From positions 372,001 through 436,000 of the IMG/VR virus record IMGVR_UViG_3300027749_002876: a stretch of DNA of 64,000 nucleotides; one strand, written 5' to 3'. The position numbers and the translations under genes were made by a program. Below are positions 23,821 through 35,057 of this stretch, piece after piece. How positions within the stretch are numbered: position 1 is the first letter of the stretch; every line of letters begins with the position of its first letter. Under the pieces are notes generated by a model, which saw nothing but the letters and a program-made list of their open reading frames with translations, was not told the origin of the DNA and ran no database searches.

Positions 23821-26800
23821 ATGAGTTTAATATTAAAACAAGAACCAGCAAATACTATATCAACTCCACCAGCCGGAAAAAGTACGCTATTTATTACTGA
23901 TACCAGCACGATGGCAGTTAAAAACCCAAGTGGGGATGTAACATATTTCCCAACTGTTCAGGGTTCAAATACACAGGTCTTTTTCAATGACAACGGTAGT
24001 ATTAACGGCAATGCTAGCTTAGTCTTTAATAAGACTACTGGCACAATGACTGTTGCTAATTTATCAGTAACCGGTACATTGAATGCAGGAGATATCAGCG
24101 TTTCATCTATTGCTAACGGTACAAGTAATGTTGATATCATTGGTATAAGCGGCAATGTAACAACAAGCGTAGCTGGTGTCGCAAATGTATTAGTTGTAAC
24201 TAGTACTGGGGCAAACATTACAGGTACACTAAGTGCTAGTGGTAACGTTACAGCACCAAACTTTATTGGTAACATTACTGGTAATATTTCAGGAAATGCT
24301 GTAACAGCAGGTACAGTAACAACTAATGCACAACCTAACATTACAAGTACAGGCACATTAACAAGTTTAAGTTCTAGTGGTAACATCACTGGTGGTAACT
24401 TAGTAACTGCTGGTAACGTAAACGCATCTATTATTGTAAATGGTGGCACAGGCGTCTATATGGCTGCTGGTCCTGCAGGATACATTAATTTCTTCACTAC
24501 TGGTGGCGACAAAGCCACTATCACTGATGCTGGTAACATCGCAGCCAGTAACTTGATTGCAAATAGCACAATTTTTGCAGTAACGGCTAATATTTCCGGT
24601 AACGTAAATGCAGGTAATGTAGCAGCCACAACATTCACTGGAGCATTATCAGGTGCGGCTACAAGTGCTACTACAGCAGGTACCGTTACAACTGCGGCTC
24701 AACCTAACATCACATCAGTTGGTACATTAACAAGTGTTTCTTCCTCAGGTAATGTAACAGGTGCTAATTTAATAACAGGTGGTATTGTAAGTGCTACAGG
24801 TAATGTTACTGCTAGCTTCTTTATTGGTAACGGTAGTCAGTTAACTGGATTAAATTCAGCAGGGGTATCAAATGGTAATAGTAATGTAAATATAGCTACT
24901 GCTAATGGTAATGTAACTATTGCCGCAGTTGGTAATACAACAATGACTATTACTGGTACTGGTGCAAATATATCAGGTACACTAAGTGCAACCAGTAATA
25001 TTACTGGTGGCAATTTAATAGTCAACAATCTAACTTCTACCCGTGTCCCGTATGTAGGTACAAGTAAACAACTCACTGATACTGCCAGTTTGGTATGGGA
25101 CAATCCAAATCAAGTATTAAAAGTAGGTGCAGGTGCTACTGAAATTGGCGGAGATGCGGGTTTTGGTTATCTCTCTACAAAAAATATAACTGCATCAGGT
25201 AATGCCAACATCGGCAATATTGGTACAGCAATATTAGTTGCAACTGGAACAGGTAGTTTTGGTGGCAATGTTAACTTAAATAGCTTTAACATTATAAGTC
25301 TCGCAACACCAGTTAATGATACTGATGCGGCAACAAAAGCATATGTAGATACAGTAGCACAAGGTCTTGATACTAAGGCTAGCGTTGTAGCCGCAACTAC
25401 AGTTAATATTACATTAACCGGCGCACAAACTATTGATGGTATATCTATTGTAGCCGGTAATAGAGTATTAGTTAAAAATCAATCAGCTCCTGCAGAAAAC
25501 GGGTTATATTTATGTGCCGCAGGTTCATGGACACGAACACCAGATATGGATAACTGGACAGAAGTTCCAGGAGCATATGTATTTGTTGAAACAGGAACCA
25601 CACAAGCAGACACTGGTTGGGTATGTACTTCAAATGCAGGCGGTACAATTGGTGTAACCGCAATGACTTGGGCACAGTTCAGTGGCGCAGGTAGTTACAC
25701 AGCAGGAACAGGACTAACATTAACTGGTACTGTTTTTAGTGCAAATGCAAGTCAAACACAAATTACAGCAGTTGGTACACTAACTAGTTTATCAGTAAGT
25801 GGTAATATCAATGCTGGTAACGTAACTGCCACCACGTTCACCGGTGCATTGACAGGTCTTGCGTCTAGTGCTACTATAGCGGCATCAGCAAACAGTGTAG
25901 CCGGCGCTAATGTATCCGGCGCAGTAGCATTCGCAACTACAGCCAATGCAGTAGCAGGTGGTAATGTCTCAGGTGCAGTCGCATTTGCAACAACTGCTAA
26001 TAGTGTAGCAGGTGCTAACGTATCTGGTACAGTGTCTAGTGCTACAAGTTCTACAACAGCCGGTACCGTAACAACTGCGGCTCAAGGTAACATTACATCA
26101 GTTGGTACATTAACAAGTTTAAGTGTATCAGGTAATATCACTGCCGGTAATATAAGTGCTACAAATCATACTGGTACAACATCAAATATTACTGGTCAAT
26201 ACATAACTACACTAGCTACAGGTACAGCACCGTTTGTTGTTACATCTACTACACAAGTTGCTAACTTAAATGTTGCTTCTGCGGGTCTTGCTACATTCGC
26301 AACAACAGCCAATGCAGTAGCAGGTGGTAATGTTTCAGGTGCAGTCGCATTTGCAACAACAGCCAATGCAGTAGCAGGTGGTAATGTTTCAGGTGCAGTC
26401 GCATTTGCAACAACAGCCAATAGTGTAGCAGGTGCAAATGTATCGGGTACTGTATCTAGTGCCACAAATGCAACCACAGCAGGTACAGTAACTACTGCGG
26501 CACAAGGTAACATTACAAGTGTTGGTACACTAAGTTCATTAAGTGTAAGTGGTCAAATAACAAATGCTAACATCACAACCGGCGGTTCTGGTACAGCAGG
26601 TAACTTAACAGGTAACTGGACATTAAGTTCAGGATCAAGACTACAAGCAACTTATGCTGACTTGGCAGAAAAATATGTTGCTGACGCAGAGTACACACCC
26701 GGTACAGTATTAATATTTGGTGGTGATAAAGAAGTCACACTAGCTAATCTATTTGACAGTACACGTGTAGCAGGGGTTGTAACAACAAATCCAGCTTATA

Positions 26801-27027
26801 TTATGAATAGTGCATGTGAAGGTGAACATGTTGTTAACATTGCTCTGCAAGGTCGTGTGCCAGTTAAAGTACAAGGTCCTGTTTACAAAGGTGACTTACT
26901 AGTATCAAGTACTAATGGACATGCTACTGCTAATAATATAGCACGTGCGGGTACTATCATTGGTAAATCACTAGAAAACTTCAATGGTGAATCGGGTATC
27001 ATTGAAGTAGCGGTAGGACGATTCTAA
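23821..27027 (+). CDS. Tail fibre/spike with C-terminal intramolecular chaperone (autocleavage) domain
   Basis: ATYADLAEKY...PGTVL...GVVTTNPA...ALQGRVPVKV...KGDLLVSS...IGKSLE C-terminus; 18-aa FATTANAVAGGNVSGAVA repeats. Confidence 0.8.
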   Translation: MSLILKQEPANTISTPPAGKSTLFITDTSTMAVKNPSGDVTYFPTVQGSNTQVFFNDNGSINGNASLVFNKTTGTMTVANLSVTGTLNAGDISVSSIANGTSNVDIIGISGNVTTSVAGVANVLVVTSTGANITGTLSASGNVTAPNFIGNITGNISGNAVTAGTVTTNAQPNITSTGTLTSLSSSGNITGGNLVTAGNVNASIIVNGGTGVYMAAGPAGYINFFTTGGDKATITDAGNIAASNLIANSTIFAVTANISGNVNAGNVAATTFTGALSGAATSATTAGTVTTAAQPNITSVGTLTSVSSSGNVTGANLITGGIVSATGNVTASFFIGNGSQLTGLNSAGVSNGNSNVNIATANGNVTIAAVGNTTMTITGTGANISGTLSATSNITGGNLIVNNLTSTRVPYVGTSKQLTDTASLVWDNPNQVLKVGAGATEIGGDAGFGYLSTKNITASGNANIGNIGTAILVATGTGSFGGNVNLNSFNIISLATPVNDTDAATKAYVDTVAQGLDTKASVVAATTVNITLTGAQTIDGISIVAGNRVLVKNQSAPAENGLYLCAAGSWTRTPDMDNWTEVPGAYVFVETGTTQADTGWVCTSNAGGTIGVTAMTWAQFSGAGSYTAGTGLTLTGTVFSANASQTQITAVGTLTSLSVSGNINAGNVTATTFTGALTGLASSATIAASANSVAGANVSGAVAFATTANAVAGGNVSGAVAFATTANSVAGANVSGTVSSATSSTTAGTVTTAAQGNITSVGTLTSLSVSGNITAGNISATNHTGTTSNITGQYITTLATGTAPFVVTSTTQVANLNVASAGLATFATTANAVAGGNVSGAVAFATTANAVAGGNVSGAVAFATTANSVAGANVSGTVSSATNATTAGTVTTAAQGNITSVGTLSSLSVSGQITNANITTGGSGTAGNLTGNWTLSSGSRLQATYADLAEKYVADAEYTPGTVLIFGGDKEVTLANLFDSTRVAGVVTTNPAYIMNSACEGEHVVNIALQGRVPVKVQGPVYKGDLLVSSTNGHATANNIARAGTIIGKSLENFNGESGIIEVAVGRF

Positions 27028-27067: not shown

Positions 27068-27514
27068 GTGATGAACGTATTTCAATTAAACTATGACACC
27101 AGACTCCAGTACTGGTATAATTTAAGACAAACTCTCCAAAATTCTAATATACAAACCCAATGTGTAGAAATAGACAAGTGGTGGCAATACGCACCATTGG
27201 TAACACATTACCTACATCCACATGAAATTGAATCATGGCCCGGTCCATGGGAATTAATTAACGATAACGAATATTGTCATTTGGCTAGAGGTTTGGGAAT
27301 GATATATACTCTATTACTATTGGGTATCACAGACATTGACTTTTGCTTAGGAAAAGACGATAATAGTGAAGACGTGGCATTAGTCATGGTCGACAACGCA
27401 AAATATCTGCTCAATTACTGGCCTGATACGGTCATAAGTAATAAACTAAAAGATTTTAAAATAGTACAAAAATTAGATTTACAAATAATAATTAAAAAAA
27501 TAGGCAACATATGA
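27068..27514 (+). CDS. Hypothetical protein
   Basis: 148 aa ORF coupled to the nrdA start; GTG start after TAAGTA. Confidence 0.6.
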   Translation: MMNVFQLNYDTRLQYWYNLRQTLQNSNIQTQCVEIDKWWQYAPLVTHYLHPHEIESWPGPWELINDNEYCHLARGLGMIYTLLLLGITDIDFCLGKDDNSEDVALVMVDNAKYLLNYWPDTVISNKLKDFKIVQKLDLQIIIKKIGNI

Positions 27515-28983
27515 AAATTAACGTCACCAAACGCTCTGGTATAAAAGAGCCGCTTACTCTGGAAAAATGGCAAGCGCAAGTAGCAAAAGTATGTAAGGGA
27601 ATAGCAGACGTTAGCCCTTCAATGATAGAAATAAAATCACAACTACACTTCTATGATGGCATCACCACTACCGAAATTGATGAGATTACACTACGTGCTA
27701 TCGTTGACTTGATTGATGTAGAAAATAATACTGATATAGGTCATACAAACTATCAATACGTAGCAGGTAAACAACGTGTCAGTATGTTGAGGAAGGATGT
27801 ATATGGTAGCTATAATGTGCCGCATCTCTATGAAATAGTTAAAAAGAATGTAGAGACCGGTCTTTATACTGATGAACTATTGTCATGGTATAATGAAGAA
27901 GATTGGAACAAGATGAATGACATGTTGGATCATTCTAAAGACGAAAGTTATAGTTATGCCGCCATTGAACAATTGATTGAAAAATACTTAGTAAAGAATC
28001 GTAGTACGAAAGAAATATATGAAACGCCACAAATTAGATACATGGTTGCAGCCGCAACAGTCTTCCATAGTGAAGAACCAAACAGTGCAAGAATGCGATA
28101 CATTAAAGAATACTATACAGCAGCCAGTGACGGATTATTCACACTTGCAACCCCCGTACTTGCCGGCTTGGGAACGCCTACTAAACAATTTAGTAGTTGC
28201 GTTCTTATTCGCTCGGATGATGATTTGGACAGTATTTTCGCATCCGGGGAAATGATGGCAAAGTATGCCAGCAAACGTGCTGGTATTGGTTTAGAAATTG
28301 GTAGACTACGTTCATTGGGTAGTCCTATTCGTGGTGGCGAAATAATGCACACCGGCATGATACCATTCTTAAAGAAATGGTTCGGAGACTTAAGAAGTTG
28401 CAGTCAAGGAGGTATTCGTAATGCAAGTGCTACTGTATTTTATCCCATTTGGCATCATCAGTTTGATGACCTTATCGTACTTAAAAACAATCAAGGAACC
28501 GATGAAACACGTGTCAGGTTCATGGACTATGGGGTTGTTCTTAGTGCATTCTTCTGGAGAAGATTTAAAAATAAAGAACAAATAACATTCTTTGATCCAA
28601 ATGAAGTGCCAGACTTATATCAAGCATTCTATAGTAATACTGAATTATTTGAAGAACTATATGTTAAATATGAAAAACGTAAAGACTTAAGAAAGAAAAC
28701 AATGAGTGCTGAAGAAGTATTCAAGAGTGGCATTCTTAAAGAACGAACAGATACAGGGCGTATCTACTTAGTGTTCGTTGACAATGTTATGAGTCAAGGA
28801 CCATTTGATCCTGAATATCATACAATTTATCAATCCAACCTTTGCTTAGAGGTACTTTTGCCGACAAAGAGTTTTAAGAAGATCGATCCGACTAGAAAAT
28901 TGATTCGGGTTAAAAAGTCCAATGTTGATGAGTTTATGAAAACTAAACCCACAGACATAGTTAAGATTAGGAAGATAAAATAG
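27511..28983 (+). CDS. nrdA: Ribonucleotide reductase class Ia alpha subunit, N-terminal fragment
   Basis: ATP-cone VTKRSG, QFSSCVL, SCSQGGIR, QSNLCLE active-site motif; ends in a basic non-RNR tail. Confidence 0.95.
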   Translation: MKINVTKRSGIKEPLTLEKWQAQVAKVCKGIADVSPSMIEIKSQLHFYDGITTTEIDEITLRAIVDLIDVENNTDIGHTNYQYVAGKQRVSMLRKDVYGSYNVPHLYEIVKKNVETGLYTDELLSWYNEEDWNKMNDMLDHSKDESYSYAAIEQLIEKYLVKNRSTKEIYETPQIRYMVAAATVFHSEEPNSARMRYIKEYYTAASDGLFTLATPVLAGLGTPTKQFSSCVLIRSDDDLDSIFASGEMMAKYASKRAGIGLEIGRLRSLGSPIRGGEIMHTGMIPFLKKWFGDLRSCSQGGIRNASATVFYPIWHHQFDDLIVLKNNQGTDETRVRFMDYGVVLSAFFWRRFKNKEQITFFDPNEVPDLYQAFYSNTELFEELYVKYEKRKDLRKKTMSAEEVFKSGILKERTDTGRIYLVFVDNVMSQGPFDPEYHTIYQSNLCLEVLLPTKSFKKIDPTRKLIRVKKSNVDEFMKTKPTDIVKIRKIK

Positions 28984-29031
28984 TAGGTAATAGTATTTCA
29001 AGCATAAATAAGACTAGAGGAAATAATTTTT

Positions 29032-29787
29032 ATGAAGAAATATATTGTCTATTGTCACACATTAAATGGCAAGAAATACATAGGATATACAGGTAAAACA
29101 ATGGAAGAACGATTACAGGATCATATCGGCGAAGCATTAGAAGGAAGTGATAGACATTTCCATCGTGCTATCAATAAGTATGGATATGAGAACATCGTTT
29201 CAGATGTGTTAGCAGAAGTATACACCAAAGATGAAGCCAAAAAGTTAGAAGAAACATTCGTTGAAAAGTTAGATACCTTCAAAAACGGATACAATATGAC
29301 TCGGGGCGGAGATGGTGGAAATACCCTTGAAAAATATACAGAAGAAAAGATGATAGAGCACCGTAAGTTAAAGTCGTTTAATTCAACCGGAATGAATAAT
29401 AGTAATGCTAAACCCAGTATTACCAAAGAGATGCTAATAGATGTAGTGTATCAGTTTTGTATAGAAAACAATAAGCAAGGAGGTTACTTGCTTAGAAAAG
29501 AAATTGAAGCAGTCCTTAAGGAAAAGTTAGGTGTTAGTCAAATGATTTTAAAAAATAGGATTGACAATGGATTTAAACAACTAGTAGAAGAAGTAAACAA
29601 AAAGTTAGATGTGCTAGTTAAGTATGATCCTTACTATAGAAGCGAAGACCATCGCAAACAATTATCATCAGCAACCTCAAGACATCGCTGGGCAACAAAC
29701 GGCATTAAAAATATTAAACTTAATGAAAAAGATTTAGAAAAGTTCCTGAAAGAGAACATGACATACAAAAAAGGCAGAACATTATGA
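29032..29787 (+). mobile_element. GIY-YIG homing endonuclease inserted in nrdA
   Basis: YIVYC...KKYIGYT...R...H, GYNMTRGGDG; own ATAAATA promoter and GAGGA SD. Confidence 0.9.
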
Positions 29788-30800
29788 ACAAACTATACGA
29801 AGAAATAGAATATCTACCTGAAGAATTAGATGACGAATATGATTATTATGAGGTTGACGAAGTTGAGGGGAGGGTGGCCCTCTGTACTCTCGGGTCAATA
29901 AATTGGGGTGCGTTCCGTAACCCAGAAGACATGCGCCGTGCTTGCCGCATATTGCATCGTAGCCTCAATAACATTCTTGACTATCAAGACTTTCTATCCA
30001 TTCAATCTAAACTATCAAACGATGAAATCAGACCTCTTGGAATTGGAATCACTAATCTTGCCTACTGGCACGCCAAGCGAAGTCTCAAGTACGGAGAAAA
30101 AGACGCATTGGCTGAAGTCAAGACGTGGATGGAACACTTATCCTTCTATTTAACTGAAGCAAGTGTGGAACTAGCACAAGAGCGTGGTCGTTGTGAACAT
30201 AGCGATAAAACACGTTATGGGCAAGGCATCTTTCCCTGGGAACTACGTGCTAAAGGTGTAAACGAATTAACTAACTTTGATCCAGAACTTAATTGGGAAG
30301 GACTACGTGCTATGATGCGTAGTTATGGTGTCCGTAATGCTACACAAATGGCCGTTGCTCCTGTAGAATCTAGTTCAGTGGTAATTAACAGTACCAATGG
30401 TATTGAGTTGCCAATGAGTTTGATAAGTGTTAAAGAAAGCAAGGCAGGAAGTTTTGTACAAGTTGTTCCCGAATATCATAAGTTGAAAAACAAATATCAA
30501 TTGATGTGGGATCAAAAAGATTGTGATGGTTACTTAAAAACAGCGGCAGTGATTGCAGCCTATGTTGACCAAAGTATAAGTACTAACACATTCTATAACC
30601 CTGCACATTTCCCTGAACGTAAAGTTCCAACAACATTGATTGCTAAGAACTTAATGCAAGCTCATTATTGGGGACTAAAGACATTCTACTATAGCTTGAT
30701 TAACAAAGCAGGTAGTAAGAGCCAAGATGAAACTGTATTAGATTTGCCAAGTGGCTTTAATGATATGGATGAAGAAGATTGCGAAGCTTGTAAATTATAA
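29784..30800 (+). CDS. nrdA: Ribonucleotide reductase alpha subunit, C-terminal fragment
   Basis: ALCTLGSIN, RNATQMAVAPVESSS, DQSISTN, KTFYY, C-terminal CEACKL; acidic N-terminal extension. Confidence 0.95.
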   Translation: MNKLYEEIEYLPEELDDEYDYYEVDEVEGRVALCTLGSINWGAFRNPEDMRRACRILHRSLNNILDYQDFLSIQSKLSNDEIRPLGIGITNLAYWHAKRSLKYGEKDALAEVKTWMEHLSFYLTEASVELAQERGRCEHSDKTRYGQGIFPWELRAKGVNELTNFDPELNWEGLRAMMRSYGVRNATQMAVAPVESSSVVINSTNGIELPMSLISVKESKAGSFVQVVPEYHKLKNKYQLMWDQKDCDGYLKTAAVIAAYVDQSISTNTFYNPAHFPERKVPTTLIAKNLMQAHYWGLKTFYYSLINKAGSKSQDETVLDLPSGFNDMDEEDCEACKL

Positions 30801-30809
30801 AGGAAAAAA

Positions 30810-31886
30810 ATGATTAAAAATATATTAATAGGATTATTGATTAGTATAGCATTAGTAGCTAAGGCAGAAGATGCACCAACCACATTATCAAACTCAGGAA
30901 CTATAAGCCCTTATAAGGCCGAGCGTGGTGGAATATTCTTAGCACCAGATTTACTTCTTGTAATTCCAGGAAACACTAAGCTTGACATAAGCACACAACC
31001 GTGGGTAGATTCTTCAAATAACACAATTGTTATTTCAAAGATGCCATACGTTAGTGGTACCAAGTATGCTAAAGATTATGCAAAAGAAGGAAGTGTATTC
31101 ACTATAACTAGTGATAAAAAGTACCGTTATTTTAAAGGTAATGGATTACCATCAACTGTAATGGGAGAGTATCCGGTACAACAAGGAACTGAAGCATACA
31201 AGTATTACAGTGTTGCACCCGGTGGACATGATTTTAGAACAGGCATTCCTGGATCAGACTACTCAAGCGCCGCGGCAATTGGCATTAGTCCTTATAGACT
31301 AGTTGTTCAACTACCAAAACATCCAAAACCTAGTGCTACTCCAAATCCAATTGCTTCATTGCCAATTGGTGTAACACTAACCGGTACTGTGTGGCATTTT
31401 GAATTAGCAAATGCCAGTGGCACTGCATGGTATAATCCAACTTCATTATTACCAATTGACCAATGCTGGGGACATCCTTATGCTCAACAATATCACTTGC
31501 ATGGTTATTCATGGAAGTGTTTCCCTAATCAAGGAACAGAAGGACATTCACCATTGTTTGGTTATGCATTTGATGGCTTTGGCATCTATGGCCCTAGAGG
31601 CGATGATGGTAAAATGGTTACCAATGAGCAACTAGATGAATGTCACGGACATACTCATCCAGTACTATGGGATGGCAAAATGAAAAACATCTATCACTAT
31701 CACTTGAACAATGAATTTCCATATAGCATCGGTTGCTTCAGGGGTAAAGTTGACTATGCCAAAGCATTAGGGTCGCCTGATATGAATGCACATGGTAAAA
31801 TGGTTCATGGCACACCGAGCCATAAACACAAAGAAGATGAAAGTCTCCCACATATTATGATTATTCCAAGGAAACCGTTTCAATGA
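30810..31886 (+). CDS. Secreted YHYH-domain protein
   Basis: Signal peptide; DQCWGHP, YHLH, GYAFDGFGIYG, LDECHGH, YHYH, FPYSIGC motifs. Confidence 0.85.
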   Translation: MIKNILIGLLISIALVAKAEDAPTTLSNSGTISPYKAERGGIFLAPDLLLVIPGNTKLDISTQPWVDSSNNTIVISKMPYVSGTKYAKDYAKEGSVFTITSDKKYRYFKGNGLPSTVMGEYPVQQGTEAYKYYSVAPGGHDFRTGIPGSDYSSAAAIGISPYRLVVQLPKHPKPSATPNPIASLPIGVTLTGTVWHFELANASGTAWYNPTSLLPIDQCWGHPYAQQYHLHGYSWKCFPNQGTEGHSPLFGYAFDGFGIYGPRGDDGKMVTNEQLDECHGHTHPVLWDGKMKNIYHYHLNNEFPYSIGCFRGKVDYAKALGSPDMNAHGKMVHGTPSHKHKEDESLPHIMIIPRKPFQ

Positions 31887-32983
31887 GCAAACAACAATAT
31901 AACTTACACACAAAGACAGATTATTTGAATAGAAAAATGTTTTTGGACCCGGAAGGTCCCGTAACCATTCAAAGATTTGAAGAAGTAAAATATAAAAAGA
32001 TTGTAGACTTTGAAACAACCGCACGTGGTTTCTTCTGGGTTCCAGAAGAAGTCAGTCTTACTAAAGATGCCAATGATTTCAAAGATTCAAGCGATGCAGT
32101 TAAACATATCTTTACCAGTAATCTATTACGTCAAACAGCATTAGATAGTTTACAAGGGCGCGGCCCTAGTCAAGTGTTTGCACCTGTCATATCATTACCA
32201 GAACTTGAAGCATTAGTTTACAACTGGACGTTCTTTGAAACTAACATTCACAGTCGTAGTTATAGTCACATCATTCGTAACATTTACAATGTACCTAAAG
32301 ATGTATTCAATACTATACATGATACAAAAGAGATTGTAGACATGGCAAGCAGTGTCGGTCGTTACTATGATGAATTGCACAAAGTAAATTGTCGTAAAGA
32401 GTTGGGTGAAAATATTAATGAAAAAGAACATATCAAAGCAATTTATATGGCACTACATGCTAGTTATGCATTAGAAGCATTTAGATTTATGGTAAGTTTT
32501 GCTACTAGTTTAGCAATGGTTGAGAACAAAATCTTTATTGGTAATGGCAATATTATCAGTTTAATTCTCCAAGATGAACTTCTTCATAAAGGTTGGACTG
32601 CTTACCTTATTAATCAGGTAGTTAAAGAAGATAGTCGTTTTGCACAAGTTAAATTGGAGTGCGAAGCTGAAGTTTATCAACTCTACTTGGATGTTATTCG
32701 TGAAGAAAAAGAGTGGGCAGACTATCTGTTTAAGATGGGTCCAGTTATTGGCTTGAATGCAACAGTGTTAAAAGACTTTGTTGATTATACTGCTGTGGGT
32801 GCATTAAAAGAAATTGGTATACGATATAATAATCCTGCACCAAAGAGTACACCTATTCCTTGGTTTAATAAACATAGTGATACAAGTAAAAAACAATCTG
32901 CATTGCAAGAAACCGAATCAACAAATTATGTTATAGGTGTAATGAGTGAATCATTAAACTATGATGACTTGCCTAATATATAA
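31883..32983 (+). CDS. nrdB: Ribonucleotide reductase class Ia beta subunit
   Basis: FFWVPEEV, QTALDSLQGR, ETNIHSRSYSH, LEAFRFMVSF, DELLH. Confidence 0.97.
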   Translation: MSKQQYNLHTKTDYLNRKMFLDPEGPVTIQRFEEVKYKKIVDFETTARGFFWVPEEVSLTKDANDFKDSSDAVKHIFTSNLLRQTALDSLQGRGPSQVFAPVISLPELEALVYNWTFFETNIHSRSYSHIIRNIYNVPKDVFNTIHDTKEIVDMASSVGRYYDELHKVNCRKELGENINEKEHIKAIYMALHASYALEAFRFMVSFATSLAMVENKIFIGNGNIISLILQDELLHKGWTAYLINQVVKEDSRFAQVKLECEAEVYQLYLDVIREEKEWADYLFKMGPVIGLNATVLKDFVDYTAVGALKEIGIRYNNPAPKSTPIPWFNKHSDTSKKQSALQETESTNYVIGVMSESLNYDDLPNI

Positions 32984-32994
32984 GGAGAATAAAA

Positions 32995-33225
32995 ATGAAA
33001 GCAGTTATTTGGTCCCGTTACCATTGTCCTTATTGCGACCAAGCAAAGGCATTACTAACACAAAAGGGTATTCCGTTTGAAGAAAAGAAAATTGGGGACG
33101 GATACACTAAAGAAGAATTATTAGAAGCAGTACCAACTGCCAGAACAGTACCACAAATCTTTTTAGATGATGAATTGATTGGTGGATTTACAGAATTAAA
33201 ACAAAAATTAACAGAAAGTATCTAA
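32995..33225 (+). CDS. Glutaredoxin
   Basis: CPYC active site, TVPQIF, IGGF. Confidence 0.95.
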   Translation: MKAVIWSRYHCPYCDQAKALLTQKGIPFEEKKIGDGYTKEELLEAVPTARTVPQIFLDDELIGGFTELKQKLTESI

Positions 33226-33531: not shown

Positions 33532-33816
33532 ATGGCAAAACTAAGTCGTGTAGGTGACAAGAATCAAGAGGGCGGCGCCATCGTAAGAGGTGCTGGTACT
33601 GTCTTTGCCAATGGAATCCAAGTTGGTATACACGTTAGTACAATTACTCCGCATGCTCCTTGGAGTAAAAAAGGTCATCCACCACACAAAGCCGCTACAA
33701 CTACAAGTGCTAGTCCAACAGTATTTGCTGAAGGTAGTGCGGTACTTAGAGTAGGGTCAGGAAACAGTTGCGGTCACAGTATCGTTGATGGTAGTCCTGA
33801 TGTATTTTGTCCATGA
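33532..33816 (+). CDS. PAAR spike-tip protein
   Basis: RVGD, TVFANG, TVFAEG...RVG...CGH...GSPDVF. Confidence 0.9.
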   Translation: MAKLSRVGDKNQEGGAIVRGAGTVFANGIQVGIHVSTITPHAPWSKKGHPPHKAATTTSASPTVFAEGSAVLRVGSGNSCGHSIVDGSPDVFCP

Positions 33817-35057
33817 GCGATTCAGGAAAACAAAGCCCACTTGGTGTTAATACACTAAGTTCATTACTACAAAATAAAGGGTTTAACATAAACCCTATCA
33901 TGGTTGAATATACCGGTGTTAGTACTAGTAAAACATCTGCTACAAACTTAGGTATAATTGTTAATAATTCATGTTTACGATTACTTACATATGCTATCAA
34001 TGATGCATATGGTAGGGGACAAGTTAACACATCAACATACAATAATCTAATTACAATTGGTTCTACAACCATACCTGCATTAGGTAATAGCAAAGCACCT
34101 ACATTTAATTGGACGGGTTATCCCAACTGGGCTAGTGATTATACTAAAACCAATGAAGTAACACGTTGGGGTTATGTAAGATTGTTTGCACTTCAAGGTT
34201 ATAATGAATTTAATTATAACAATGGCTTACCAGAATATAAAGATTATCTGTCAGCCTTTATGGCGGCAAGTAGTTTTGTTGAGAATTCTAACAAAGCTAT
34301 TATGTCAATGACAAATTCGCAAGACTTTTTAGATGGCACGTATAGTAATATGAATGATTTGATTAGTGCTGATATTGCTGGAATAAGTTTAGCAACATCA
34401 GCATTTGGTCGTGATTTAATTACCAGTGGCAAAGCAATCAACTTATCAACGATATCAACATTTGGTTTACCATCTAATTTATTATCAACATTACAACAAT
34501 ATAATTGTATAACAAAAGATGTGAGTTTAGCTATATTAGCATCTGGACTACAATTAGATGAATTAAGTCAATTGTTATCTAATATCAATTCTGCCACAAA
34601 AGAACAACAACGTAGACTATATGGTGCATTTAATCTTATAGTAGGCGATAGCCTTAATGATGTATTAGTAACATTGAATTGTAAAACACGTGGAGTAGAA
34701 TCGTTAGCAGATTTGTTAAATCCAAAAAAGTTATTTCCTAATAGTTATCAAACACTAACTGTTCCTGTTTACAATACAACTAGGGCTCCTACTAATAGTA
34801 AGACATATTATCCTATATACAGTAACGGGTCTACCAATGGTAATCTTAATAGTCCTTTAGTATCAAATCAAATTGGTACACAAACACCTACCGGAACACC
34901 ACCTATAGCAGAATCTATAATAACTCAACCAGAAACTGCTGTTATACAAAATGCAGTTGCCACAACCATTGCTGATGTAAATGCCGGTGGTGGAGATGGC
35001 GGTGGTGGAGATGGAGGCGGCGGTGGCGGTGGTGGTGGTGGCGGAGGTGCAATGTAA
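33813..35057 (+). CDS. Putative virion protein ending in a poly-Gly run
   Basis: ATGA-coupled to PAAR; SLADLLNPKKLFPNSY motif. Confidence 0.6.
   Translation: MSDSGKQSPLGVNTLSSLLQNKGFNINPIMVEYTGVSTSKTSATNLGIIVNNSCLRLLTYAINDAYGRGQVNTSTYNNLITIGSTTIPALGNSKAPTFNWTGYPNWASDYTKTNEVTRWGYVRLFALQGYNEFNYNNGLPEYKDYLSAFMAASSFVENSNKAIMSMTNSQDFLDGTYSNMNDLISADIAGISLATSAFGRDLITSGKAINLSTISTFGLPSNLLSTLQQYNCITKDVSLAILASGLQLDELSQLLSNINSATKEQQRRLYGAFNLIVGDSLNDVLVTLNCKTRGVESLADLLNPKKLFPNSYQTLTVPVYNTTRAPTNSKTYYPIYSNGSTNGNLNSPLVSNQIGTQTPTGTPPIAESIITQPETAVIQNAVATTIADVNAGGGDGGGGDGGGGGGGGGGGGAM

What the first reader, a model, noticed from the sequence alone, without database searches (positions are those of the whole stretch)
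28840..29900. nrdA split at the active site by a GIY-YIG gene, with oppositely charged docking tails
Seen: the break lies between the NLCLE motif and the ALCTL cysteine. The N-fragment ends in a 38-aa tail with 14 K/R and 4 D/E; the C-fragment starts with a 29-aa head with 13 D/E and 1 K. No intein termini are present, and nrdA-b has its own ATGA-coupled start. Established: phage Aeh1 nrdA is split in this region by the HNH gene mobE and assembles a composite active site using charged tails. Inference: an independent GIY-YIG-driven case with a compact electrostatic heterodimer module that could be useful as a protein-joining tag.
Basis: partly seen in the sequence, partly recalled or inferred. 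Interest (0 to 1): 0.7.

Follow-up and report, generated by a model that had tools for sequence, protein, structure and literature searches.

The report
Split phage nrdA with charged tails
A freshwater giant-phage ribonucleotide reductase gene is cut in two at its active site by a homing-endonuclease gene, and the two halves carry conserved, oppositely charged extra tails that are related to those of the one studied case (Aeromonas phage Aeh1), so it is a new and widespread member of a known oddity rather than an independent invention.

Summary
nrdA-a (27511-28983), a GIY-YIG endonuclease gene (29032-29787) and nrdA-b (29784-30800, ATGA overlap) split a class Ia RNR alpha subunit exactly between the E. 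coli C439 and C462 equivalents. The charge counts are correct.

It is neither an intron nor an intein:
- Rfam finds no group I intron here, while it finds all three T4 introns.
- Relatives keep the same tails with no endonuclease, only 7 nt apart.
- Every nrdA-b has its own ribosome-binding site.
- Tail codons are under purifying selection (dN/dS 0.03-0.24), like the enzyme core.

The 'independent case' reading is not supported:
- The basic tail is homologous to the Aeh1 NrdA-a tail (0 of 2000 shuffles reach its profile score).
- Aeh1 is the only one of 50,697 phage records matching through the tail.
- Relatives carry endonucleases with the Aeh1 MobE DNA-binding domain.

The cassette is mobile. 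Split and unsplit alleles interleave on the tree and co-occur in single samples, and the DNA is mosaic around the break.

In Aeh1 the tails are dispensable for a/b heterodimer formation, so the 'heterodimer tag' idea has no support; my tail-only fold gave no verdict.

Caveat: the 524-kb record also holds an unsplit nrdA and looks like two related genomes joined.

The parts
27511..28983 (+). nrdA-a: N-terminal 490 aa of the class Ia RNR alpha subunit (ATP-cone, all-alpha domain, first half of the barrel). Holds the equivalents of E. coli C225, N437, C439 and E441.
   Evidence: ORF; Pfam; alignment to E. coli R1 residues 5-453.
28837..28851 (+). Codons for NLCLE (N443-E447), the active-site loop motif just before the break.
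28888..28980 (+). Basic C-terminal tail proper (residues 460-490), absent from unsplit relatives.
   Evidence: Comparison with unsplit alleles. dN/dS 0.05-0.24. Homology to the Aeh1 tail. A low-confidence AF2 model suggests strand 464-468 and helix 469-478.
28984..29031 (+). Intergenic spacer with a GAGG ribosome-binding site for the endonuclease gene.
   Evidence: Sequence.
29032..29787 (+). Free-standing GIY-YIG homing-endonuclease gene (251 aa). The nuclease domain is aa 4-88. The C-terminal part (aa 143-249) is shared with an HNH-type ORF that sits inside a split intein of a relative.
   Evidence: Pfam PF01541, E 2.2e-7. 73% identical full-length copies at the same site in L047 and L068. 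C-terminal match to the L054 ORF, E 7e-16. Single copy in the record.
29784..30800 (+). nrdA-b: C-terminal 338 aa of RNR alpha (second half of the barrel). Holds the C462 equivalent (Cys34, 29883-29885), the YY pair and the C-terminal CxxC.
   Evidence: ORF; Pfam profile positions 223-426; alignment to R1 451-749.
29784..29870 (+). Acidic N-terminal head of NrdA-b (29 aa, 13 D/E and 1 K).
   Evidence: Conserved in about 100 clusters. dN/dS 0.03-0.10. Predicted disordered on its own, at low confidence.
30810..31886 (+). YHYH-domain ORF with an N-terminal hydrophobic leader, occupying the variable slot between nrdA-b and nrdB. Context only, not part of the split.
   Evidence: Pfam PF14240. Present only in the window and L003 among 80 loci.
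31883..32983 (+). nrdB (RNR small subunit), the partner of the assembled alpha subunit.
   Evidence: Pfam PF00268.
32995..33225 (+). Small CPYC-motif ORF (76 aa) downstream of nrdB, glutaredoxin-like by position and motif only. Context, not tested here.
   Evidence: ORF (CPYC motif). By position it matches the gene annotated glutaredoxin after nrdB in phage X1; a gene after nrdB in a relative locus (L088) hits Pfam Glutaredoxin. The window's own ORF was not scanned.

Best explanation
This is an Aeh1-type 'gene in pieces'. The class Ia RNR large-subunit gene is interrupted in the loop between the C439 and C462 equivalents by a mobile cassette. The cassette consists of a basic tail fused to the upstream half, an exchangeable free-standing homing-endonuclease gene (here GIY-YIG), and an acidic head with its own start fused to the downstream half.

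Shown:
- The two halves are separate cistrons, each with its own translation start signals.
- The tails are under protein-level purifying selection.
- The basic tail is homologous to that of phage Aeh1.
- The cassette moves between closely related freshwater giant phages. Flanking nrdA sequence is co-converted, the endonuclease is sometimes lost or replaced, and the split remains.

Inferred from the Aeh1 experiments: NrdA-a and NrdA-b associate non-covalently through the barrel halves. The tails, which sit at the break next to the alpha-alpha dimer helices, are needed to form an active (a/b)2 large subunit that binds NrdB. In this view they make the insertion phenotypically neutral rather than acting as the primary glue of the heterodimer.
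For: - Exact split of the barrel profile at 222/223, with all catalytic residues present across the two halves.
- No intron: there is no RF00028 match in 28500-30300 at E<=10 or near the locus in the whole record. The same search finds the three T4 introns at 105, 40 and 36 bits.
- L052 and L053 keep tail and head with only 7 nt between the stop and the ATG and no endonuclease.
- Every split locus examined has a Shine-Dalgarno sequence and an ATG for nrdA-b.
- Nei-Gojobori dN/dS is 0.05-0.24 for the tail, 0.03-0.10 for the head and 0.05-0.13 for the core, with synonymous sites near saturation.
- Aeh1 tail homology. Smith-Waterman score is 47 against 22.7+/-4.6 in shuffles, p=3e-4. A profile of 8 tails scores the Aeh1 tail at 16.6 bits against 0.0+/-3.1, reached by 0 of 2000 shuffles. 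Aeh1 is the only phage record of 50,697 whose match runs through the tail.
- The endonuclease in L055-type alleles shares its C-terminal 160 aa with Aeh1 MobE (E 2e-21).
- Mobility. The split state needs at least 24 changes on the NrdA-b core tree (at least 8 forced by well-supported branches), and identical cores occur in both states. The window against L068 has flanks of 73-76% nt identity but a tail of 94%. The window against unsplit L004 has flanks of 89-92% but only 64% in the 39 nt before the break. Split and unsplit alleles co-occur in the same metagenome runs.
- Function of the tails in Aeh1: PMC3045599.
Against: - The acidic heads of this clade and of Aeh1 are not similar beyond composition (p 0.35 and 0.11; 1211 of 2000 shuffles). 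Homology therefore rests on the basic tail and on the endonuclease DNA-binding domains.
- No biochemical or transcript evidence exists for this phage. The RNA-library contigs are too sparse to exclude splicing.
- Structure predictions were uninformative.
- The 524-kb record also encodes an unsplit nrdA that is 91% identical. For this record, the split copy therefore cannot be shown to be the only source of RNR alpha, although the record looks like two genomes joined.
Confidence: 0.72

Rival explanations
1. Independent, convergent case. A GIY-YIG insertion created this split on its own, and the charged tails evolved de novo, resembling those of Aeh1 only through similar selection.
For: The endonuclease here is GIY-YIG, not HNH. 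The acidic heads show no similarity to the Aeh1 head beyond composition. Unrelated tail pairs with reversed polarity exist at the same loop in L090, L091 and L094, so charged tails can arise repeatedly.
Against: The basic tail matches the Aeh1 tail at 12 of 24 positions, at the same offset from LPT, and far above composition-matched shuffles. L050-type tails are intermediate (LPTVAMG against Aeh1 LPTVPMG). The same tails occur with three different endonucleases or with none, so the GIY-YIG gene did not create them. MobE-type DNA-binding domains occur in sister alleles.
Confidence: 0.15
2. The tails are the primary docking device: an autonomous basic/acidic heterodimerisation module that holds NrdA-a to NrdA-b and could be transplanted as a protein-joining tag.
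For: Opposite net charge (+10 and -12) is conserved across about 100 clusters. Six of seven tail pairs found at this loop are charge-complementary, three of them with reversed polarity.
Against: In Aeh1, tail-less halves still form the heterodimer, and the defect lies in (a/b)2 formation, NrdB affinity and activity (PMC3045599). The head is predicted disordered on its own, at low confidence. There is no positive evidence here that the tails bind each other.
Confidence: 0.15
3. A group I intron that carries the GIY-YIG ORF (like T4 td with I-TevI). RNA splicing would restore a continuous nrdA, and the 'tails' would be in-frame intron sequence.
For: The intervening length of about 1 kb with a 251-aa GIY-YIG ORF resembles T4 td with I-TevI (my own knowledge). 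The insertion lies at a conserved active-site region, as is typical for introns.
Against: There is no RF00028 match, with a positive T4 control. Endonuclease-free alleles leave only 7 nt of non-coding DNA. Substitutions in both tails follow the codon pattern, with dN/dS well below 1. nrdA-b has its own SD and ATG. No spliced joint was seen in RNA libraries, which is weak evidence.
Confidence: 0.02
4. A split intein: the tails are IntN and IntC, and protein trans-splicing ligates the halves.
For: Genuine split inteins with an endonuclease gene between the halves do occur in nrdA of the same clade (L054 and many IntC-NrdA-b proteins).
Against: Those inteins sit 13 residues upstream, at NLC|C, and show Hint/intein Pfam hits and the ...HN|C end. 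The window's tails total only about 58 aa. The NrdA-a fragment gives no Hint or intein hit. There is no Cys/Ser at the N-junction and no HN plus nucleophile at the C-junction.
Confidence: 0.02
5. A broken, dispensable nrdA. RNR alpha would be supplied by the unsplit copy in the same record or by the host, and the split copy would be decaying.
For: The record holds a second, intact nrdA (773-aa frame, 91% identical).
Against: Both halves and both tails are under purifying selection across many contigs. All catalytic residues are kept. The split allele is common. The second copy lies in an inverted, colinear block of 78% identity, which suggests two genomes joined in one record.
Confidence: 0.05

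Closest known systems
Aeromonas phage Aeh1 nrdA-a / mobE / nrdA-b (Friedrich et al. 2007; Crona et al. 2010, PMC3045599)
   Same: Both break between the C439 and C462 equivalents (Aeh1 C431 / C31; here C445 / C34). Both have a free-standing endonuclease gene in the gap that overlaps the nrdA-b start. Both have a basic tail on NrdA-a and an acidic head on NrdA-b. The basic tail is homologous.
   Different: The endonuclease here is GIY-YIG, not HNH MobE. The heads share only their acidity. The host phage is an uncultured freshwater giant phage whose NrdA core is only about 40% identical to that of Aeh1. Here the split is a widespread polymorphism with exchangeable or missing endonucleases, whereas Aeh1 was described as unique and its tails as having no database match.
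Fractured genes with split inteins (Dassa et al. 2009, PMC2677866)
   Same: An essential phage gene, often an RNR gene, is cut in two with a free-standing endonuclease gene between the halves. Such alleles exist in this same clade (L054).
   Different: Here there is no Hint domain, no splicing motifs and a different insertion point. The halves must work without ligation.
T4 td / nrdB / nrdD group I introns with I-TevI-III
   Same: A homing endonuclease ORF of similar size interrupts a nucleotide-metabolism gene at a conserved site.
   Different: There is no intron RNA fold, and the flanking 'intron' sequence is translated.
T4 gp39 / mobA / gp60 topoisomerase split (discussed in PMC3045599)
   Same: An endonuclease-associated split of an enzyme subunit, with tail-like extensions of opposite charge.
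   Different: It involves a different enzyme. A function for those tails is speculation in that paper, and no sequence relation was tested here.

Membership tests
Aeh1-type fragmented NrdA (NrdA-a/NrdA-b with tails) | Break in the loop between the E. coli C439 and C462 equivalents, leaving active-site cysteines on separate chains | tested here: met
   C445 lies on NrdA-a and C34 on NrdA-b.
Aeh1-type fragmented NrdA (NrdA-a/NrdA-b with tails) | Free-standing endonuclease gene in the gap; no intron, no intein | tested here: met
   No Hint or intein hit on the fragments, in contrast to L054.
Aeh1-type fragmented NrdA (NrdA-a/NrdA-b with tails) | Basic C-terminal tail on NrdA-a and acidic N-terminal tail on NrdA-b | tested here: met
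   Net charges are +10 / -12 here and +6 / -10 in Aeh1.
Aeh1-type fragmented NrdA (NrdA-a/NrdA-b with tails) | Sequence homology of the NrdA-a tail | tested here: met
   p=3e-4; 0 of 2000 shuffles; Aeh1 is the only phage record matching through the tail.
Aeh1-type fragmented NrdA (NrdA-a/NrdA-b with tails) | Sequence homology of the NrdA-b head | tested here: inconclusive
   The similarity is not above composition-matched shuffles.
Aeh1-type fragmented NrdA (NrdA-a/NrdA-b with tails) | The endonuclease is MobE (HNH) | tested here: not met
   The window's ORF is GIY-YIG. Sister alleles have GIY-YIG/Seg-like enzymes with the MobE C-terminal domain.
Aeh1-type fragmented NrdA (NrdA-a/NrdA-b with tails) | Tails required for (a/b)2 assembly, NrdB binding and activity | not testable with these tools
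   Known only from Aeh1 biochemistry. Purifying selection here is consistent with it but does not demonstrate it.
Class Ia ribonucleotide reductase alpha subunit (NrdA) | ATP-cone, all-alpha domain and 10-stranded barrel with C225, N437, C439, E441, C462, the YY pair and C-terminal cysteines | tested here: met
   Pfam. Alignments to E. coli R1, E 1e-132 and 1e-65. nrdB lies next door.
GIY-YIG homing endonuclease | GIY-YIG catalytic domain above the Pfam cut-off | tested here: met
   PF01541 scores 31.5 bits against a cut-off of 22.6.
GIY-YIG homing endonuclease | Evidence of homing: presence/absence polymorphism and co-conversion of flanks | tested here: met
GIY-YIG homing endonuclease | Site-specific cleavage of the endonuclease-free allele | not testable with these tools
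   This needs an in vitro cleavage assay.
Group I intron | Conserved P3-P8 core detectable by RF00028 | tested here: not met
   with the T4 positive control.
Split intein | Hint fold blocks, an N-terminal Cys/Ser and a C-terminal HN plus nucleophile | tested here: not met
   Compare the genuine case, L054.

The most novel reading that the evidence does not exclude
The basic tail, an exchangeable endonuclease gene and the acidic head form one self-contained 'split-and-mend' cassette. It has spread horizontally between distantly related phage lineages (T4-like Aeh1, at least two other NrdA lineages, and freshwater giant phages) and carries the means of making its own insertion into an essential active site harmless. 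Unrelated tail pairs of reversed polarity at the same loop suggest that charge-complementary tails are a general, repeatedly found way to tolerate gene fragmentation.
Probability: 0.4. Interest if true: 0.7.

Novelty: new member of a known kind. Interest (0 to 1): 0.5.

Why it matters
The Aeh1 split RNR has stood as a single curiosity whose tails had no relatives. This locus shows several things:
- The same tail exists in a large, abundant group of uncultured freshwater phages.
- The tails are kept by selection even after the endonuclease is lost.
- The split travels as a cassette with different nucleases.

Together these give a natural series of more than 100 variants for asking how an enzyme tolerates being cut at its active site and how a selfish element neutralises its own damage. 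The reversed-polarity variants at the same loop act as natural charge-swap controls. The practical idea of a portable joining tag remains untested, and the Aeh1 data argue against the simplest version of it.

Tried and rejected
- Complex prediction of the tails alone (NrdA-a 438-490 with NrdA-b 1-42) scored 0.21, under the mark of 0.34. That is no verdict either way.
I did not resend those sequences.
- AF2 monomers of each half were of low confidence (mean pLDDT 46 and 62). They give only a hint of a strand plus helix in the tail and a disordered head.
- Idea: the tails are the two halves of a pre-existing loop-insertion domain seen in some unsplit NrdAs (P0136, P0225, P0170, P0140, P0244 and others). 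Profile tests were not above shuffles, so I dropped it.
- Idea: the tail end (KIRKIK) is a remnant of the IntC start (MIKIRKIK...) of the clade's intein. The insertion sites differ and there is no further similarity, so I did not pursue it.
- A region-restricted word search with the tail found only 12 close relatives.
- RNA-library contigs show no spliced joint, and one exact contig lies inside the endonuclease ORF. Coverage is too thin, and DNA carry-over cannot be excluded.
- Megablast of the locus against isolated phages found nothing.
Full report
WHAT IS THERE

The window is bases 372,001-436,000 of a 524,565-bp IMG/VR virus record. Public runs that hold the locus are freshwater, lake and estuary metagenomes. 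Between 27,511 and 33,225 the + strand carries, in order:
- nrdA-a (27511..28983, 490 aa)
- a GIY-YIG ORF (29032..29787, 251 aa)
- nrdA-b (29784..30800, 338 aa)
- a YHYH-domain ORF (30810..31886)
- nrdB (31883..32983)
- a small CPYC-motif ORF (32995..33225) that is glutaredoxin-like by position and motif only

NrdA-a matches positions 1-222 of the Pfam RNR barrel profile and NrdA-b resumes at 223. Against E. coli R1, NrdA-a 3-459 aligns to residues 5-453 and NrdA-b 23-321 to 451-749. N443/C445/E447 are therefore N437/C439/E441, and Cys34 of NrdA-b is C462. The nrdA-b ATG overlaps the endonuclease stop (ATGA). Unsplit close relatives read ...LLPTKSFKRLDDPDGRIALCTL. The truly extra parts are thus about 31 aa on NrdA-a and 27 aa on NrdA-b.

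NOT AN INTRON, NOT AN INTEIN, NOT A WRECK

The gap is about 1 kb with a 251-aa GIY-YIG ORF, the size of the T4 td intron, so I took splicing seriously.
- An E-value scan of 28500-30300 against Rfam gives no group I intron. A scan of the whole record with RF00028 gives nothing near the locus.
- The same search on T4 finds its three introns at 105, 40 and 36 bits.
- More decisive is the census of 80 related IMG/VR loci. Two of them (L052, L053) keep the same tail and head with no endonuclease. There, the tail stop and the nrdA-b ATG are 7 nt apart, which leaves no room for an intron core.
- Every split locus has a Shine-Dalgarno sequence and an ATG for nrdA-b.
- Between split alleles the synonymous sites of tail and head are near saturation while non-synonymous change is low. 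dN/dS is 0.05-0.24 for the tail, 0.03-0.10 for the head and 0.05-0.13 for the enzyme core. The tails are therefore translated and kept by selection.
- They carry no Hint or intein signal and lack the junction residues. A genuine split intein in the same clade (L054) shows what one looks like. IntN follows NLC, then comes an HNH-type ORF, and the IntC ends ...HN before CEILLPTK. The N-extein-IntN product gives intein Pfam hits, and the site lies 13 residues upstream.

RELATION TO AEH1

I fetched the Aeh1 locus.
- Its NrdA-a ends ...LPTVPMGKKEKMLFKVKKSEVDKFKLMVATDQYKSLRY. The window's ends ...LPTKSFKKIDPTRKLIRVKKSNVDEFMKTKPTDIVKIRKIK. A second tail type in the clade (L050) reads ...LPTVAMGTTKKKFIKVKKEVASDF... 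and is intermediate.
- The window and Aeh1 tails share 12 of 24 aligned residues at nearly the same offset from LPT. The Smith-Waterman score is 47 against 22.7+/-4.6 for 20,000 composition-preserving shuffles, p=3e-4.
- A profile built from eight clade tails scores the Aeh1 tail at 16.6 bits against 0.0+/-3.1. No shuffle of 2000 reaches it.
- In a tblastn of the 48-aa end of NrdA-a against 50,697 phage records, Aeh1 is the only phage whose match runs through the tail (query 1-43, 44% identity). All other matches stop within the conserved first 17-27 residues.
- The acidic heads are not similar beyond composition.
- The 243-aa Seg-like endonuclease of L055-type alleles shares its C-terminal 160 residues with Aeh1 MobE (31% identity, E 2e-21). 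So does the ORF upstream of another acidic-headed NrdA-b from a different NrdA lineage (P0163 / L092).
- The window's own GIY-YIG protein shares its C-terminal 107 residues with the HNH-type ORF of the L054 split intein (E 7e-16).

So two DNA-binding modules are each found joined to either nuclease type at this gene. I conclude that the split is of the Aeh1 family, not an independent invention, and that the GIY-YIG gene is one of several interchangeable occupants.

A MOBILE, POLYMORPHIC CASSETTE

- A search restricted by length to half-size proteins found 1842 NrdA-b-like proteins. About 100 of the best 120 clusters carry the acidic head MNxLYEEIExLPEELDDEYEYYE... with 12-14 D/E.
- Among the 80 best IMG/VR loci, 63 are unsplit, 13 split, one has the split intein and three are truncated. 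Note that this sample and the length-filtered one are biased in opposite directions.
- On a tree of the NrdA-b core (197 rows), the split state needs at least 24 changes, at least 8 of them forced by well-supported branches. Identical cores occur in both states, and the window's nearest neighbours are unsplit.
- At DNA level, the window against split L068 shows flanks of 73-76% identity, a tail of 94% and an endonuclease of 80%. The window against unsplit L004 shows flanks of 89-92% but only 64% in the 39 nt just before the break. That mosaic is the co-conversion signature of homing.
- In the metagenome runs that hold the window, contigs of the unsplit allele co-occur with the split allele. 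They show as a joint 28838 to 29898 and as loose ends reading SNLCCEILLP and DGRIALCTLG.
- The gap content varies: the same GIY-YIG gene alone (window, L003), the same gene plus two small ORFs (L047, L068), other Seg-like GIY-YIG genes (L050/51, L055-59), or nothing (L052/53).

HOW IT MOST LIKELY WORKS

Shown here:
- There are two cistrons, each with its own translation start signals.
- The tails are selected.
- A full set of catalytic residues is divided between the chains.

Taken from Aeh1 biochemistry (PMC3045599):
- Tail-less halves still form the a/b heterodimer.
- Tail-less halves fail to form (a/b)2 with dATP, bind NrdB about 200-fold less well in the presence of dATP, and are inactive.
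- Modelling places the tails near the alpha-alpha dimer helices.

By homology I expect the same here. The barrel halves hold the heterodimer together. The basic tail and acidic head, probably with each other or with the opposing subunit, restore the geometry needed for dimerisation and for the composite active site. This last step is inference.

Seven tail pairs at this loop could be compared.
- Three are of the Aeh1 type, with net charges of +6 to +10 on the tail and -10 to -14 on the head.
- Three are apparently unrelated and have reversed polarity: L091 (-7 / +4), L094 (-7 / +3, no endonuclease) and L090 (-12 / +3).
- One is not complementary: L096 (-3 / -3).

Charge complementarity is therefore recurrent, which supports an electrostatic role. 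It does not show that the tails are a sufficient docking module. My tail-only complex prediction gave no verdict and is not evidence either way. The monomer models were of low confidence.

CAVEAT ON THE RECORD

The same record encodes a second, unsplit nrdA: a 773-aa frame at about 150.9-153.2 kb on the minus strand, 91% identical, with the short loop. Self-comparison gives three results.
- About 68 kb of the first 192 kb match the region beyond 385 kb.
- The matches are in inverted, colinear order at a mean of 78% identity.
- There is a 4.1-kb direct repeat of 99.6% identity at the record's end.

The record is probably two related genomes joined, one with each allele, rather than one 524-kb genome. 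A working homing endonuclease would also be expected to convert a susceptible second copy in the same genome. I could not settle this.

COMPARISON AND NOVELTY

The closest known system is Aeh1 nrdA-a/mobE/nrdA-b. This locus meets its defining layout and shares its basic tail. It differs in the nuclease family and in being a common polymorphism. The 2010 paper reported no database match for the tails and treated the case as unique. I found no paper in the searchable library describing relatives.

I rate it a new member of a known kind. Its added value is a natural variant series, persistence without the endonuclease, nuclease swapping and reversed-polarity analogues. Interest is 0.5.

Noticed in passing
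G000:C1:150893-153214 (outside the window) and the whole record: A second, unsplit nrdA (773-aa frame, 91% identical) lies in a block that is inverted and colinear with the window's region at about 78% nt identity. Bases 172,924-177,012 repeat at 520,477-524,565 at 99.6%. The 524-kb record looks like two related phage genomes joined.
   Followed up: partly
L054:79-2953: A relative's nrdA is split by a genuine split intein at NLC|C. IntN ends the first ORF, a 311-aa HNH-type ORF follows, and IntC (ending ...HN) starts the second ORF. Many IntC-NrdA-b proteins from other lineages appear among the representatives.
   Followed up: partly
L090:49-2567; L091:3-1895; L094:2-1361: Three apparently unrelated non-intein splits occur at the same loop with reversed polarity (acidic tail, basic short head). 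One of them has no endonuclease and only a 1-nt spacer. The acidic tails of L091 and L090 loosely resemble intein N-terminal blocks by eye; this was not tested.
   Followed up: partly
P0273, P0274 (328 aa): These products start with the C-terminal part of an intein at the CSQGG site, continue with the middle of NrdA and end with the same basic tail. Some relatives may therefore have nrdA in three pieces, or a contiguous intein with a miscalled start.
   Followed up: no
window 30810-31886: A YHYH-domain ORF with a hydrophobic N-terminal leader sits between nrdA-b and nrdB only in the window and L003. In relatives this slot is empty or holds other inserts of 0.6-3 kb, including a MobE-like HNH ORF in L068.
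   Followed up: partly
L047:3424-4004; L068:1497-2161; L050:2518-2901: Small ORFs of unknown function (65-128 aa, no Pfam hit for the two that were scanned) ride between the endonuclease gene and nrdA-b. By eye, the 125-aa L068 ORF and the 127-aa L050 ORF look alike although their endonucleases differ.
   Followed up: no
P0136, P0225, P0254, P0126, P0140, P0130, P0137 (unsplit NrdA representatives): Unsplit NrdA proteins from other lineages carry 40-95-aa insertions in the same loop, so the loop tolerates large additions. No sequence relation to the tails was detectable.
   Followed up: yes
window 29147-29390: A metatranscriptome library (run X19) holds an exact contig inside the GIY-YIG ORF and another at the start of nrdA-a. 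This is compatible with transcription, but DNA carry-over cannot be excluded.
   Followed up: partly
window 23821-27027 and 33807-35057: A 1068-aa ORF with many repeated short Gly/Asn/Thr/Ala-rich segments (fibre-like) lies upstream of the nrd cluster. Downstream, a 416-aa ORF ends in a run of about 20 glycines. Neither was analysed.
   Followed up: no
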